From Perna viridis (taxonomy: Eukaryota): a DNA stretch of 64,000 nucleotides. This document shows positions 5,749 to 64,000 of the stretch, piece by piece. The position numbers and the translations under genes are program-made. The DNA is taken from NCBI GenBank assembly GCA_037379345.1, contig CM074521.1:20546704-20610703 (forward strand), read 5' to 3'. A model generated the notes under the pieces. The model was not told the origin of the DNA. It searched no databases and worked only from the letters and a program-made list of their open reading frames with translations. The stretch's first letter is position 1. Each line of letters begins with the position of its first letter.

Positions 5749-6557
5749 TAAAACAAATATGAATAAACGATGAATAAAGATATTGGTAAATAAATACTCC
5801 CCAAAAATGTAGGTAATTAATAAAAATTATGAATTTATACAATTCAAGAACAGGAAATGAAGCAACAATATATTTTGATGACCAAAAACTATCGAGGAGC
5901 ATCTGCATTTCACGTCGAGTTCTTTTCTTTAAATACAACTTAAAGTTAATACTTTCTTTTTGCAAGGTAAAAACCTAACGCAAGAAGTCTAAATTAGTGT
6001 TAAACTCTTAAATGGTGCGTTGCTATAAGTGAACGTATACTACCAAGATATATCATGCGCAAAATAATATAAGCACACAAAAAGCGAAAAGATACCACCC
6101 ACCTGAGTGTATCTTATCAGGGTTTACCATTGTGCTGGTAATTATCAAAACAAGATAATCACTGACTAAAGGGACTTGAACGTAATTGACTACACTTTCG
6201 GGTCTTCGTCCGGTGATTATAATTGAACAAAAAAAAATAATGGAATTTTGTTAGATCACGTCTATTACATGTACACGAAAAATTCTTTTCTATCATTATC
6301 ATTATCATCTTGCAAAATTATACCCATGTATGTATCGTCAACAATCAAATAGTGCTAAAAATGACTTTTACCTATTTAAAAATAGTATTTAACATAAATG
6401 TAGAACAGGTTCTTTAGAAATAAAGATATAATTGGCGGGGGGGAATATATAAGATATCCTCTTCAATAATAAATGCTGTAGACATGCTTACAACAAATCT
6501 GCTTCCATTTTTGCCTTATGAAACATATTGATTTCTATTTTGTAGGTCTCTTCAAAC

Positions 6558-9533
6558 ATGGGAAGGTTCGTCCTATGGATTATATTGTTAATGTGTATAT
6601 TATCCGAGTGCAGGACTTCCCATTTTAGTGCATCTAAATCGTCTAGAAGTGACAGTAGTAACAATGTTCCTAAACAAAGGGGAGGTAATTTTCATAAGCA
6701 AATTGTTGTGGGATCTAAACCTGGGATGACTAGTTTTTCGTTTAAATCTGCAATGACAAGTGTTTCATTTAATGCAGATCCTACAAAGAAGAAAAACCAA
6801 CCGCCCTCAGTGAGAGATAATTTAACACCGCAATCCGCAAACCAGCAACCGAATATTCCTCTGCCTAATATGAACAGAGGACTGCAATCACGTCCACAAC
6901 AACCTCCTCCAAGACGGTTTCAAGCTCAAGTACAACCATCTCAACCCCAAAAGATGCCGATACCACCGCAAAATCAGATTCGACCTCAGCCACCTGCTAA
7001 TCAAGGTTTCAATTTTCATTCAGTAGTTAGACCTGCACATAGTAGTAGTAGTAGTTACTATCATTCTGTACCTTATCCAGCGTATCATCAAGGTAATAAA
7101 TCATCTGCATTGCATGAAAGCAGGCGTAGTAATATAATCAATTCTAGCATTGTGGTAGTGGGAAATAAACATGCAGCTAGCAACAATAGTAATAGTGGCA
7201 TGGGTGGTGATGGACATATAACAAACATTGTGCTAAGCAAAACAGGAACGCAAGAACTTCTTTATGATGTAAAAACACAAGAGGGTCAATCGCAGCATAA
7301 CAATATGCGCTCTTTCAAGCGAAACTTGCGAGGAAATGCTTCGACGTTAAATTACATTGATGATAAGAAATCAGTAGCGACTGATTTGTATCAACAAGAA
7401 ATCGTTAACCAAATTGATATTTTGTTCGCAAAAATGCCTATATTCAGCTTCAAAAATGCGCATACTATATCTAATCACCCAACGGCTAAAGGAAATAATA
7501 ATGAGAATAAATTTTCAACATTTCTTCACAGCGTAGACCGTCTAGACCTTAGTATTCGAAAAAGTTCCAAGAGAAACTCAACTTTAGAAGTACAGCACTA
7601 TTATGAATCTAAACATTCTGGGCATAACGGGTTAGGCAAATTGTTGACATCAACACAGAGTCTACAGAGTATGTATACTCAAAAGCACAAACAAGAAAAA
7701 CCGGTTTTAAAGAAGTTGAGTACAGAAAAAAATTCGTGGGGCGAGACCAAAACATTGCCAATTGACAATGTTATAGCAATGAATGTTCTGTCCTTCCTAG
7801 ATACACAGAAAAGAGAAGACACGTCGTCTTATACCAAACAGTCTGGTCATTATATACTGTCGCATCCGTCCAATTCCACTTACTCCAAACAAGTAGATAA
7901 TTCTGCAGGATTGTATTCAACGAACAGGGTTATTTTATCGAATCCTGTAACTTTAAATGGCAATTTGAATCCTGTACAGTCATTTGTCGTTTCTCATCCG
8001 TTAAGTTCTAAGGTATATTCAACCTCAAACCATACGAATATTAATCAAGACAATGAAAGAACTATCAATCGTATTCCGAATGATAAGAATGATGAACATT
8101 TAAATAATTCGTCAATGTCACTTACGACCAATCATGCTGATAAGACTACCATGAAAACAACATTAAGCTACGTGAACAGTTCGGATATCGCAAGTGTCTA
8201 CGGAACTGAGAAAATAACTAACTCAGATATGAGAGAGAGTACAGATAACACCCTTAATAAGACTAAATATGTTTTAAGCACTATTCAACCAAACATCACA
8301 ATCAACGATATACAGACAAAAGAAAGATCGAATGTTAAATTTCCAAAGAAGTTGGATAAACTTTCTATTCCGTCAATGGTGAAGGAGGTCAAAAACACAC
8401 TACTTGAACCTGTACAAGAGCACAACAAAATGGCGAGAGGGAAACATTCTAAAATAGATTTCGAAAGAAAACAATTAAATATACCACTAAAAGGATTGAC
8501 TACAAATCTTGATTTAATCAAACCAAACGAAATTAATCATTGGGCAAATTTAACGACAGAACGAAATTCATCAGCGGACACCAGTCAATCTTCATTAACT
8601 TTATCTGATATCATTAATATTCATCATGCCGCTACACGGCTTGAAACTACTAAAGACATAACTATTCGCTTTGCTAGTAAAACGAAACCATCTTTGGGTT
8701 CCCATGACGACAAAGGAAATGGTTTTAACACTAAAAATAAATCAGAAATTTCAGGCATGGAAGAAACAACAACACAAAACCAGAACAATACGTCGACAAT
8801 GCCTTTAGTCATCGGAAATAATGTTTTTCAATCGGAAGTAAACTCTACAAGCAACGCCGATTTTAACTTGAGTTCTTTGAATAGTGTGATGCCTGAAATT
8901 CCGGATGAAACCTCACCATTTAATAAACAACCAGTGCCTTTGAGAAGCGATGTTTCAATAACGGTCTTTTATTCTAAAACTCAAAGTGAAAGTTCAACTA
9001 TGAATAAAACAAGCATAAAATCGCCAAAACAAACTTTTAACCAGCAAATACACTCAAAATCTGAATCAGGATATTCACCCAATAGTTTATTGACAAGTGA
9101 TATCTCAAATGCGGCTAACAGTGTTTCTACGCATACGCATACAATTCCACCTGACGCTATCTTGCCAAAAAGTCATTCATCCAAATTAGTTCGAAATCAG
9201 GTACCCGAACTCTCACCAATATATCTATTTAATAACAATATTGTAAAAACAGGTTATTCTGTTCCAGTACAAGTGACAACACCAACCACAACTGGACCAT
9301 CGATGCCATTCCCACAAACTGTCGAATCCATCGCAGCTGCTTACAGTACTGTTATGTCTCGTTTAAAGTATCCTTCTCAAAGAACAAAAGCCAATGTGAT
9401 AGATGATTGGAACACACACAATGGAATTTCCCTAAATAATGTTAAACCAACAAATCTAATGAATAATGAAGCTGTTTTCACTTATCTAGCTCCAGGCTTC
9501 ATGAACGTTGTGGATACTGTCGATAGTAGCTGA
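6558..9533 (+). CDS. Gene A: secreted low-complexity protein, 991 aa (Pro/Gln-rich N-terminal ~178 aa, then Ser/Thr/Asn-rich mucin-like region)
   Basis: 2.97-kb ORF in AT-rich DNA. Signal-peptide-like start MGRFVLWIILLMCILSECRTS. Acceptor ttctattttgtAG ends at 6545, 12 nt before the ATG. No Cys after the leader, many N-x-S/T sequons, AATAAA at 9860-9865. Confidence 0.85.
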   Translation: MGRFVLWIILLMCILSECRTSHFSASKSSRSDSSNNVPKQRGGNFHKQIVVGSKPGMTSFSFKSAMTSVSFNADPTKKKNQPPSVRDNLTPQSANQQPNIPLPNMNRGLQSRPQQPPPRRFQAQVQPSQPQKMPIPPQNQIRPQPPANQGFNFHSVVRPAHSSSSSYYHSVPYPAYHQGNKSSALHESRRSNIINSSIVVVGNKHAASNNSNSGMGGDGHITNIVLSKTGTQELLYDVKTQEGQSQHNNMRSFKRNLRGNASTLNYIDDKKSVATDLYQQEIVNQIDILFAKMPIFSFKNAHTISNHPTAKGNNNENKFSTFLHSVDRLDLSIRKSSKRNSTLEVQHYYESKHSGHNGLGKLLTSTQSLQSMYTQKHKQEKPVLKKLSTEKNSWGETKTLPIDNVIAMNVLSFLDTQKREDTSSYTKQSGHYILSHPSNSTYSKQVDNSAGLYSTNRVILSNPVTLNGNLNPVQSFVVSHPLSSKVYSTSNHTNINQDNERTINRIPNDKNDEHLNNSSMSLTTNHADKTTMKTTLSYVNSSDIASVYGTEKITNSDMRESTDNTLNKTKYVLSTIQPNITINDIQTKERSNVKFPKKLDKLSIPSMVKEVKNTLLEPVQEHNKMARGKHSKIDFERKQLNIPLKGLTTNLDLIKPNEINHWANLTTERNSSADTSQSSLTLSDIINIHHAATRLETTKDITIRFASKTKPSLGSHDDKGNGFNTKNKSEISGMEETTTQNQNNTSTMPLVIGNNVFQSEVNSTSNADFNLSSLNSVMPEIPDETSPFNKQPVPLRSDVSITVFYSKTQSESSTMNKTSIKSPKQTFNQQIHSKSESGYSPNSLLTSDISNAANSVSTHTHTIPPDAILPKSHSSKLVRNQVPELSPIYLFNNNIVKTGYSVPVQVTTPTTTGPSMPFPQTVESIAAAYSTVMSRLKYPSQRTKANVIDDWNTHNGISLNNVKPTNLMNNEAVFTYLAPGFMNVVDTVDSS

Positions 9534-63666: not shown

Positions 63667-64000
63667 ATGATGAACTGTATTGTAATAATGACAGTGATTC
63701 TGTCGATATTGAGTCCCAGCCTGACAAACCATCTTAGACCGCCCTACTACAGAGGCGGGTACCCATATCAATACCAATACCAATACCAACCTCCCCTTCA
63801 AAGAGCCACACAAAAACCGAAAACAACAACGACTACCACAACGGCTGCCACAACAGTTGGTGAATACGAGCCACCAGAAATGGAAGGTGTGACATCAACT
63901 ACTACGACCACACCAAAGCCAACGACGAAAAAGCCTGCTGGTCCTCATTACCCAAATTATTATGTGAATTATAACCACCAATACCCGGCATACAATTACA
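63667..64000 (+). CDS. Gene E (runs off window end): secreted Tyr/Pro/Thr-rich protein
   Basis: Acceptor ttttattttgtcttccAG ends at 63660. My translation: MMNCIVIMTVILSILSPSLTNHLRPPYYRGGYPYQYQYQYQPPLQRATQKPKTTTTTTTAATTVGEYEPPEMEGVTSTTTTTPKPTTKKPAGPHYPNYYVNYNHQYPAYNY..., with no stop in 111 codons. Confidence 0.88.
   Translation, partial: MMNCIVIMTVILSILSPSLTNHLRPPYYRGGYPYQYQYQYQPPLQRATQKPKTTTTTTTAATTVGEYEPPEMEGVTSTTTTTPKPTTKKPAGPHYPNYYVNYNHQYPAYNY

What the first reader, a model, noticed from the sequence alone, without database searches (positions are those of the whole stretch)
6546..64000. Cluster of orphan secreted low-complexity proteins with a shared gene design (candidate shell, byssus or mucus matrix locus)
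Seen: A, B, D and E each have a signal peptide, almost no Cys in the mature chain, no recognisable folded domain and one large coding exon. The ATG lies 12, 18, 63 and 6 nt after an AG|GT acceptor, implying an upstream exon that is probably non-coding. Their chemistries are complementary: P/Q-rich, S/T/N-rich, acidic plus Lys-rich, Tyr-rich. Established: mollusc shell-matrix and byssal proteins are often secreted repetitive low-complexity proteins, and vertebrate SCPP genes form a cluster of P/Q-rich and acidic secreted proteins with an untranslated first exon. Inference: a lineage-specific, co-regulated extracellular-material cluster, analogous but not homologous to SCPP.
Basis: partly seen in the sequence, partly recalled or inferred. 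Interest (0 to 1): 0.78.

Follow-up and report, generated by a model that had tools for sequence, protein, structure and literature searches.

The report
Mussel cluster of secreted disordered proteins
A 75-kb stretch of a mussel chromosome (probably the green mussel) carries at least five neighbouring, unrelated genes that each put a signal peptide and a very long, cysteine-free, unstructured protein into one giant exon; two of them are kept in the same order in blue mussels, so they are real mussel-family-specific genes, but which secreted material they build is still unknown.

Summary
The sequence observation holds. The four ORFs start with signal-peptide-like N-termini, have essentially no Cys after them and match no Pfam or PDB family. 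Each ATG lies exactly 12, 18, 63 or 6 nt behind a polypyrimidine-AG site.

Corrections:
- They are not all orphans. B (16205-19747) has orthologues in Mytilus edulis, M. galloprovincialis and a deep-sea mussel. The P/Q exon (11169-12334) sits upstream of B in Mytilus too, under purifying selection.
- "A" is one gene with two possible products: a 991-codon single-exon ORF, or exon 1 (to the donor at 7092|7093) joined in phase 1 to the P/Q exon.
- E runs 1.55 kb past the window. It has 629 aa and is Gln-rich overall, Tyr-rich only at its start.
- A fifth member (Z) lies 6 kb upstream of the window.
- The assembly gap is intergenic.

AlphaFold gives B a pLDDT below 50 throughout. No homology among members was detected.

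Function is not settled. None of the five proteins' marker peptides occurs in the published Perna viridis shell proteome.

Best reading: a Mytilidae-restricted neighbourhood of secreted, disordered, probably glycosylated matrix or mucus proteins. Co-regulation and a shell or byssus role remain untested. The scan's other note on this window (s1-753465) covers the A gene.

The parts
6546..7092 (+). Gene A, first coding exon. Inferred acceptor AG at 6544-6545, ATG at 6558, signal peptide of about 18 aa, then a P/Q/Y-rich stretch up to the best phase-1 donor CAAG|GTAATA (7092|7093).
   Evidence: acceptor and ATG. (donor ranking; the composition flips from P/Q/Y to S/N exactly at residue 179). The donor's use is inferred, with no RNA evidence.
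7093..9533 (+). Read-through part of the A ORF (A-long, 991 aa in all; S/N/T/K-rich, Cys-free). It is open for 812 codons inside what the spliced model treats as an intron.
   Evidence: Sense-strand A-richness matches that of B (AT skew +0.11 to +0.20). Single copy in the genome. No relatives found.
11169..12334 (+). P/Q exon (Q 27%, P 22%). Acceptor tttcAG at 11167-11168, phase 1. It ends in a Thr run, an EAPEYEGVEIEG motif and an aromatic tail (QDFFMFYPVFDAFFT), then the stop.
   Evidence: Syntenic orthologue upstream of the B orthologue in M. edulis and M. galloprovincialis, with the same phase: 54% identity over the last 132 aa, dN/dS 0.31 between the two Mytilus species. No signal-peptide mini-exon lies between 9400 and 11170.
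14602..14786 (.). Assembly gap. It is intergenic, 2.3 kb after the P/Q exon stop and 1.4 kb before the B acceptor.
   Evidence: Not filled or looked up.
16187..19747 (+). Gene B. Acceptor AG at 16185-16186, ATG at 16205, 1180 aa, T/S/N/K-rich. Signal peptide ends ...VWA|F. One conserved Cys (C1080). Conserved N-terminal block (1-120) and C-terminal block (about 820-1180).
22335..23717 (-). Gene D. Acceptor 63 nt before the ATG at 23654, 439 aa. Signal peptide, an acidic EPPEPPEPPEIEIEFFE block, a long Lys-rich basic block, and a short acidic/hydrophobic tail.
   Evidence: No relatives found. Only a 26-aa motif is kept at the syntenic minus-strand place in M. edulis.
63661..64000 (+). Gene E, start only. 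Acceptor AG at 63659-63660, ATG at 63667. The ORF continues to L009:2259, which is window-equivalent 65556. It is 629 aa: a Tyr-rich start, Thr runs around GEYEPPEMEG, then a long Gln/Asn-rich body.

Best explanation
This is a Mytilidae-restricted neighbourhood of at least five single-copy genes: Z, A with its P/Q exon, B, D and E. They are not detectably homologous to one another. Each encodes a secreted, cysteine-free, intrinsically disordered protein.

Shown:
- The ORFs are far too long to be chance.
- They begin with signal-peptide-like segments.
- They have no known domain.
- B and the P/Q exon are conserved in order, orientation and intron phase in Mytilus.
- B is predicted to be unstructured apart from a few short conserved helices.

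Inferred:
- Each gene is transcribed from a short non-coding first exon, spliced to a giant exon that starts 1-63 nt before the ATG.
- The products enter the secretory pathway. They are probably heavily N- and O-glycosylated: there are many N-x-S/T sites in A-long and B, and Thr runs in the P/Q protein and in E.
- They are exported as components of a hydrated extracellular gel, coat or matrix.
- The short conserved end motifs do the docking or oligomerisation, for example B's N-terminal block and its C-terminal amphipathic helix next to the only conserved Cys. The long middles evolve almost freely.

Which secretion they belong to (mucus, egg or larval coat, periostracum, byssus, shell) is open.
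For: - ORF sizes are 402-1195 codons, against a background maximum of 274 in the window. Published P. viridis mean exon length is 193 bp (PMC7971044).
- With about 34% GC, I estimate roughly 7% of random codons are stops. On that estimate 440-1195 open codons cannot be chance.
- Cys is 0.00 in every member.
- Signal-like N-termini and ATGs just behind pyrimidine-AG sites.
- Z has a separate signal-peptide exon whose phase-1 donor matches a phase-1 acceptor.
- B: exhaustive HMMER found only three hits, all mytilid. The M. edulis gene is also a single coding exon.
- The acceptor and about 35 nt before it are conserved 18 nt upstream of the ATG in three other mytilid sequences.
- dN/dS is 0.57 overall and 0.26 in the N-terminal block.
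- The P/Q exon is syntenic and in the same phase in Mytilus, with dN/dS 0.31.
- AlphaFold on the B family alignment gives pLDDT below 50 for all 1180 residues.
- No Pfam or PDB relatives.
- All tested members are single copy in the genome.
Against: - No transcript, tissue or protein evidence could be obtained here.
- Signal peptides and disorder for A, D, E and Z rest on reading the sequence, not on a predictor.
- The 5' non-coding exons were not located.
- D has no intact counterpart in M. edulis.
- The members share no detectable homology or proven co-expression, so a joint function is an assumption.
- By my rough hand count, B has about 27 N-x-S/T sites, close to the roughly 21 its composition predicts. 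Sequon density is therefore not independent evidence of glycosylation.
Confidence: 0.6

Rival explanations
1. One reading: a co-regulated shell, periostracum or byssus matrix locus whose members, with complementary chemistry, assemble one biomaterial.
For: - The products look secreted, low-complexity and lineage-restricted, like many mollusc shell-matrix and byssal proteins.
- The chemistries differ: Q-rich (P/Q protein, E), K-rich (D) and S/T/N-rich (A-long, B).
- B evolves fast (dN/dS 0.57), as shell secretomes do.
- A transglutaminase is listed in the P. viridis nacre proteome. That would suit Gln-rich plus Lys-rich substrates, but this link is my inference only.
Against: - Marker peptides of the P/Q protein, B, D, E and Z are absent from the full-sequence supplement of the P. 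viridis shell proteome.
- The Mytilus versions of the markers are absent from the M. galloprovincialis shell proteome supplement.
- No hit in the byssus or foot-gene supplements, nor in 8 million papers.
- The members lack the Gly/Tyr/Lys/DOPA-type or Asp-rich compositions typical of byssal or acidic shell proteins.
- Co-expression is untested.
Confidence: 0.15
2. Neighbours by coincidence: independent, functionally unrelated, fast-evolving secreted or disordered genes. They sit together only because young, intron-poor genes accumulate in such regions. There is no shared regulation or product.
For: - No homology among members.
- D is on the opposite strand.
- E is separated from D by 40 kb that holds three copies of an unrelated Cys-containing membrane-protein gene.
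- A start codon in exon 2 is common in animal genes generally (my knowledge).
- Other windows of this genome also hold lineage-specific disordered-protein clusters, so such genes are frequent here.
Against: - Five giant Cys-free coding exons with signal peptides lie within 75 kb of a genome whose mean exon is 193 bp.
- The order P/Q exon then B is retained in Mytilus.
Confidence: 0.2
3. Regulated-secretion cargo: granin-like or prohormone-like precursors that are cut at basic sites into smaller peptides.
For: - B carries a polybasic stretch (SRKRKRKRRKYRK) whose core is kept in Mytilus (KKRKRRRRKYK).
- D is full of Lys/Arg pairs.
- Granins are also acidic or basic, Cys-poor, disordered secretory proteins (my knowledge).
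Against: - Between the basic sites there are no conserved peptide units.
- The conserved parts are the termini, not repeated peptides.
- Sizes of 1000-1700 aa and repeat turnover between species fit structural or glyco-proteins better.
Confidence: 0.04
4. Not genes at all: chance ORFs, repeats or decayed mobile elements.
For: Low-complexity DNA can hold long open frames. The P/Q exon contains a 30/60-bp tandem repeat.
Against:
- Orthologues with purifying selection exist for B and the P/Q exon.
- The members are single copy.
- Intron phases match between donors and acceptors.
Confidence: 0.01

Closest known systems
Mytilus uncharacterised proteins VDI66326.1 (M. galloprovincialis) and CAG2232435.1 / XP_071153745.1 (M. 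edulis; auto-named 'GATA zinc finger domain-containing protein 14-like')
   Same: True orthologues of B:
- same signal peptide;
- same N-terminal block (AKLLSNFP..RKDNII.ELH..LLL.NPGVIPGGAI);
- same C-terminal block (KPTVEWLGI, C..SYKLAL.VLQTILMNMN.IKPP, KRRYLLIPLG, VPYRVRPRNP);
- a single coding exon;
- the same upstream neighbour, the P/Q exon.
   Different: Overall identity is only 27-29%. The middle 700-1200 residues are species-specific repeats. The RefSeq name reflects Asn-rich composition, not a GATA domain (no Pfam hit is recorded). None has been studied.
Vertebrate SCPP gene cluster (enamel matrix proteins, caseins, salivary proteins)
   Same: A chromosomal cluster of genes for secreted, Cys-poor, disordered proteins that are P/Q-rich or charged, with an untranslated first exon (established knowledge; here the first exon is only inferred).
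   Different: - No sequence relation.
- The members here are not paralogues of one another.
- The signal peptide shares the giant exon with the whole protein, except in Z.
- The two introns that can be read are phase 1, whereas SCPP introns are phase 0.
- No evidence of calcium or phosphate chemistry.
Mammalian epidermal differentiation complex, 'simple' genes (loricrin, involucrin, SPRR, LCE)
   Same: A cluster of genes with one non-coding exon followed by a single exon holding the entire low-complexity, Gln/Lys/Pro-rich ORF. The products are cross-linked into an insoluble layer (my knowledge).
   Different: Those proteins have no signal peptide and act inside the cell. Here all members have one. 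Cross-linking here is only a speculation.
Mollusc shell-matrix proteins with repetitive low-complexity domains, and mucin-like mucoperlin
   Same: Lineage-restricted, secreted, compositionally biased and fast evolving. The P/Q protein and E have Thr-run and Pro-rich mucin-like linkers.
   Different: Not detected in the P. viridis or M. galloprovincialis shell proteome supplements. No Asp-rich, Gly-rich or chitin-binding modules.

Membership tests
Mytilid 'B family' (VDI66326.1 / XP_071153745.1 group; unnamed) | Conserved signal peptide plus N-terminal block, and a C-terminal block with one invariant Cys | tested here: met
   phmmer E-values 2.5e-59 to 1.9e-31. 5-sequence alignment A1 with invariant columns in residues 1-120 and 938-1106.
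Mytilid 'B family' (VDI66326.1 / XP_071153745.1 group; unnamed) | Same gene structure and neighbourhood (single coding exon, P/Q exon upstream on the same strand) | tested here: met
SCPP (secretory calcium-binding phosphoprotein) genes | Descent from SPARC/SPARCL1, with paralogy among cluster members | tested here: not met
   No Pfam or PDB hit. No similarity among members.
SCPP (secretory calcium-binding phosphoprotein) genes | All introns in phase 0 | tested here: not met
   The Z signal-exon donor and acceptor, and the best A donor with the P/Q acceptor, are phase 1.
SCPP (secretory calcium-binding phosphoprotein) genes | Untranslated exon 1, with the signal peptide in exon 2 | tested here: inconclusive
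   Acceptor-like sites lie 1-63 nt before each ATG, and the one in B is conserved. No transcript shows the upstream exon.
SCPP (secretory calcium-binding phosphoprotein) genes | Ser-x-Glu phosphorylation clusters near the N-terminus | not tested
   The script machine was lost, so no motif statistics were run.
Shell matrix proteins of Perna and Mytilus | Protein identified in shell extracts | tested here: not met
   Marker peptides are absent from the full-sequence supplement of PMC6641155 and from the PMC4517812 supplements. Caveat: those unigenes may be partial, and Cys-free glycosylated low-complexity proteins give few tryptic peptides.
Byssal / foot proteins | Foot-gland-specific expression or presence in the byssus proteome | tested here: inconclusive
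   No marker peptide in the supplements of PMC6508894 or PMC7971044, but these files may not contain sequences. No RNA data could be reached.
Gel-forming mucins | Pro/Thr/Ser tandem repeats flanked by Cys-rich VWD / C8 / CK domains | tested here: not met
   Thr runs are present, but there is no Cys and no VWD or CK domain.
Simple EDC-type genes | Cytoplasmic product without a signal peptide; non-coding exon 1 plus one coding exon | tested here: not met
   All members start with a hydrophobic signal-like segment. The exon layout is similar, but only inferred.

The most novel reading that the evidence does not exclude
The neighbourhood is a mussel-family-specific, co-expressed 'material locus'. 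It would be functionally convergent with the vertebrate SCPP or epidermal-differentiation clusters. Non-homologous Gln-rich proteins (the P/Q protein and E), a Lys-rich acidic/basic diblock protein (D) and glycosylated S/T/N-rich proteins (A-long, B, Z) would be secreted together. They would assemble by charge-driven condensation or transglutaminase Gln-Lys cross-links into one extracellular layer. Gene A would supply two different components from one promoter by using or skipping a donor inside its own ORF.
Probability: 0.12. Interest if true: 0.72.

Novelty: new member of a known kind. Interest (0 to 1): 0.42.

Why it matters
Mussels are models for wet adhesives, shells and mucus, yet a large share of their secretome is made of lineage-restricted proteins that nobody has characterised. 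This locus offers a compact set of such genes with clear anatomy. It includes one family (B) and one P/Q-rich gene that have been kept across Mytilidae, so they are functional. If tissue data show joint expression, the locus would be a tractable invertebrate case for two questions: how non-homologous disordered proteins become organised into one chromosomal 'material' cluster, and how a single gene (A) can yield two chemically different secreted chains.

Tried and rejected
- **Reads.** I did not try again, so read laying was never used. No reason such as 'human-like' was given.
- **Protein searches that found nothing.**
  - Word-index search of A-long, whole and residues 1-160.
  - Word-index search of D.
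  - Atlas look-ups of D and Z. One search was a frame slip, corrected.
  - Metagenome scans for Z and E; these find only close relatives.
Their 'orphan' status is untested.
- **Homology among members was not found:** all-against-all BLASTP, B-family profile against D and A, and the P/Q tail against E (E = 0.9). The EYE..E.EG / Thr-run and QD.F...FD..F resemblances between the P/Q protein and E therefore remain an unproven lead.
- **I could not reach the 5' part of the M. edulis gene that ends in the P/Q exon.** It is annotated at 890 aa and runs off locus L018. So I could not test whether Mytilus also has an A-long-type ORF.
- **AlphaFold of the intervening F domain** was too poor to search (pLDDT 33), and its PDB sequence search was empty.
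- **Literature:** accession numbers and marker peptides occur in no paper of the library.
- **The script machine was lost.** Planned statistics (pI, charge blocks, sequon enrichment against shuffles, S-x-E motifs) were not run. The sequon figure for B is a hand count.

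
Full report
**Setting.** The window is G000:C11:20546704-20610703 of a 723-Mb assembly in 46 pieces. Earlier agents of this scan took the genome for the green mussel Perna viridis. My data fit that. The only relatives of gene B are mytilid at just 27-29% overall identity. P. viridis is the one sequenced mytilid with a genome of about 726-732 Mb; the others exceed 1.2 Gb (PMC7971044).

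**The assembly gap (tested first).** The Ns at 14602-14786 are flanked on the left by an A-rich low-complexity run and on the right by unique AT-rich DNA.
- The gap lies 2.3 kb after the stop of the P/Q exon and 1.4 kb before the acceptor of B.
- The only 'ORFs' across it are made of X.
- It therefore breaks no coding frame. Continuity is unknown, and it could hide B's first exon or promoter.
- I did not fill it or look it up.

**The observation.**
- Stop-free frames of 995, 402, 1195 and 440 codons lie at 6546-9530 (+), 11126-12331 (+), 16160-19744 (+) and 22338-23657 (-). A further frame runs off the window end from 63508.
- Everything else in the 64 kb stays at or below 274 codons. The species' mean exon is 193 bp.
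- At about 34% GC, I estimate roughly 7% of random codons are stops. On that estimate these frames cannot be chance.
- All have a Cys fraction of 0.00.
- The ATGs at 6558, 16205, 23654 (minus strand) and 63667 are followed by classic n/h/c signal-type segments.
- There is no Pfam hit.

**Corrections to the anatomy.**

*Gene A.*
- The 991-codon ORF changes composition at residue 179, from P/Q/Y-rich to S/N/T-rich. At that point sits the second-best phase-1 donor of the ORF by score (CAAG|GTAATA, 7092|7093); the top-scoring one is at residue 43 (6685).
- The P/Q-rich frame at 11126-12331 begins with a strong phase-1 acceptor (ttttttttaatttcAG|GG, exon from 11169).
- There is no signal-peptide mini-exon between 9400 and 11170.
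- So the P/Q-rich secreted protein needs exon 1 of A plus this exon. Read-through gives a 991-aa S/N/T-rich protein with the same head.
- The 812 open codons after the donor, with the same sense-strand A-richness as B, argue that read-through is also coding.
- This matches the scan's other note on this window (s1-753465). Without RNA, the use of either path is inferred.
- I did not search the joined model. The exons were searched separately.

*Gene E.* It continues beyond the window to L009:2259. It has 629 aa with 23% Gln. The Tyr-rich part is only its first ~150 residues.

*A fifth member, Z, lies upstream of the window.*
- L012:1531-1594 encodes MKGLLKTLALFLSIHNVHTQP. An acceptor lies 1 nt before the ATG, and the donor is CAG|GTAAGC in phase 1.
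- L012:2167-4070 is a phase-1 acceptor followed by a 634-codon Cys-free exon rich in S/L/N/P/M.

*Between D and E.* Three copies of an unrelated gene lie here (see 'Noticed in passing'). The tight core is Z-A-B-D, about 32 kb. E is an outlier 40 kb further on.

**Are they orphans?**

*B is not.*
- An exhaustive HMMER pass over 1.84 billion representatives gave exactly three hits, with E-values of 2.5e-59 to 1.9e-31.
- They are M. galloprovincialis VDI66326.1, M. edulis CAG2232435.1 / XP_071153745.1, and contigs from sea water above deep-sea mussel beds at a South China Sea cold seep.
- The alignment shows invariant blocks in residues 1-120 and about 820-1180, with species-specific repeats between them.
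- In M. edulis the CDS is again one exon.
- The acceptor, with its probable branch region, is conserved exactly 18 nt before the ATG in Perna, both Mytilus species and the seep mussel.
- dN/dS between the two Mytilus species is 0.57 overall and 0.26 in the N-terminal block.

*The P/Q exon is conserved too.*
- It lies upstream of B on the same strand in M. edulis and M. galloprovincialis, with the same acceptor phase.
- It is 54% identical to Perna over the last 132 residues, and its dN/dS is 0.31.

*D.* Only a 26-residue motif survives at the syntenic minus-strand place in both M. edulis assemblies, inside a 70-codon frame. No gene is annotated there. D is either decayed or very diverged in Mytilus.

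*The rest.*
- A-long and D found nothing in the word-index search.
- Records of this genome seem to be withheld from those collections, because not even self-hits appear.
- E and Z received only weak searches.
- All tested members are single copy in G000.

**Structure and relatedness.**
- AlphaFold on the B alignment gives a mean pLDDT of 27 with no residue above 50. Isolated helices appear only at 57-77, 973-1006 and 1082-1100, which are the conserved patches. The alignment is shallow, so this is supportive rather than conclusive.
- There are no PDB relatives for the B family or Z.
- No member is detectably related to another. The shared features are design and composition class, not ancestry.

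**Function.**
- String searches with marker peptides gave nothing in any of the following:
  - the P. viridis shell proteome supplement, which prints full sequences;
  - the M. galloprovincialis shell proteome supplements, with the Mytilus versions of the markers;
  - the P. viridis byssus and foot-gene supplements, which may hold no sequences.
- Accessions and motifs appear in no paper.
- What remains is inference from anatomy: a signal peptide; no Cys; long unstructured chains rich in Ser/Thr/Asn, or in Gln/Pro with Thr runs; an acid/base diblock in D; and conservation confined to short terminal motifs.
- That profile fits exported, glycosylated matrix or mucus components that dock through their ends.
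- I put about 0.6 on 'real, mytilid-restricted, secreted disordered proteins acting outside the cell'. I put much less on any particular material: shell or byssus about 0.15.
- A purely coincidental neighbourhood (about 0.2) cannot be excluded.

**Comparison with known systems.**
- The locus works on paper like the SCPP cluster or the simple epidermal-differentiation genes: a non-coding exon 1, then the whole low-complexity ORF.
- It is a member of neither. It has phase-1 introns, no paralogy and no SPARC relation, and, unlike the epidermal-differentiation genes, it has signal peptides.
- It is a new, uncharacterised example of the lineage-restricted secreted low-complexity proteins that are common in mollusc secretomes.

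**Limits.**
- The script machine was lost, so composition statistics beyond searches were not run.
- The count of about 27 N-x-S/T sites in B is by hand.

Noticed in passing
L012:1531-1594 and L012:2167-4070 (window-equivalent -8469 to -5930, + strand): Gene Z, an extra cluster member outside the window. It has a 21-aa signal-peptide exon with an acceptor 1 nt before the ATG and a phase-1 donor. This is followed by a 634-codon Cys-free exon rich in S/L/N/P/M, with repeated 'NP-hydrophobic-L...G' units near its end. Single copy; no Pfam, PDB or Atlas match.
   Followed up: partly
window 36655-37476 + 38233-38898; 44775-45521 + 46185-46847; decayed copy around 27400-28200: A tandemly duplicated two-exon gene family lies between D and E (72% and 66% identity between copies).
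- Exon 1 is a Cys-containing domain of about 250 aa (CLDALNKGES...VYCEFGLSGGYTFISN) that loosely recalls fibrinogen-type domains. It has no Pfam or PDB hit.
- Exon 2 is a Thr-rich stalk with a C-terminal membrane anchor.
- AlphaFold was uninformative (pLDDT 33).
- This family is unrelated to the finding.
   Followed up: partly
window 12380-12421: A run of 31 A starts 3 nt after an AATAAA, 57 nt downstream of the P/Q exon stop. M. edulis has only A9 at the matching place (L018 around 2652). It is probably an expanded mononucleotide run in a very short 3' UTR, not a retrocopy tail, because the upstream intron is conserved.
   Followed up: partly
window 55611-56144: A minisatellite of about seven 66-69-bp units, open in one frame (QA[VI]HENLKFSVLRFTGLICC repeated). 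It is probably non-coding repeat DNA.
   Followed up: no
L018:16449-16661 (-) and L022:16547-16624 (-), Mytilus edulis: At the place where Perna has gene D, M. edulis keeps only a short frame with the motif FRFFDVISYYKIGKMFS (Perna: FRFSDIISGFKSGKLFS). This is a likely remnant or a strongly diverged exon of a D orthologue.
   Followed up: partly
L019, L021 (ENA metagenome scaffolds, samples SAMN18200487 and SAMN18200485): Sea-water 'microbial' metagenomes from above a cold-seep mussel bed contain 7-9-kb contigs of mussel nuclear DNA. These carry a complete B-family gene of 1634-1745 aa with a long SSDSKRHNNSKV repeat array.
   Followed up: partly
window-equivalent 93756-96665 (-), i.e. in L014/L017 downstream of the window: A row of four adjacent minus-strand ORFs (137-299 codons) of ordinary composition. 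This may be a mobile element. It was not examined.
   Followed up: no
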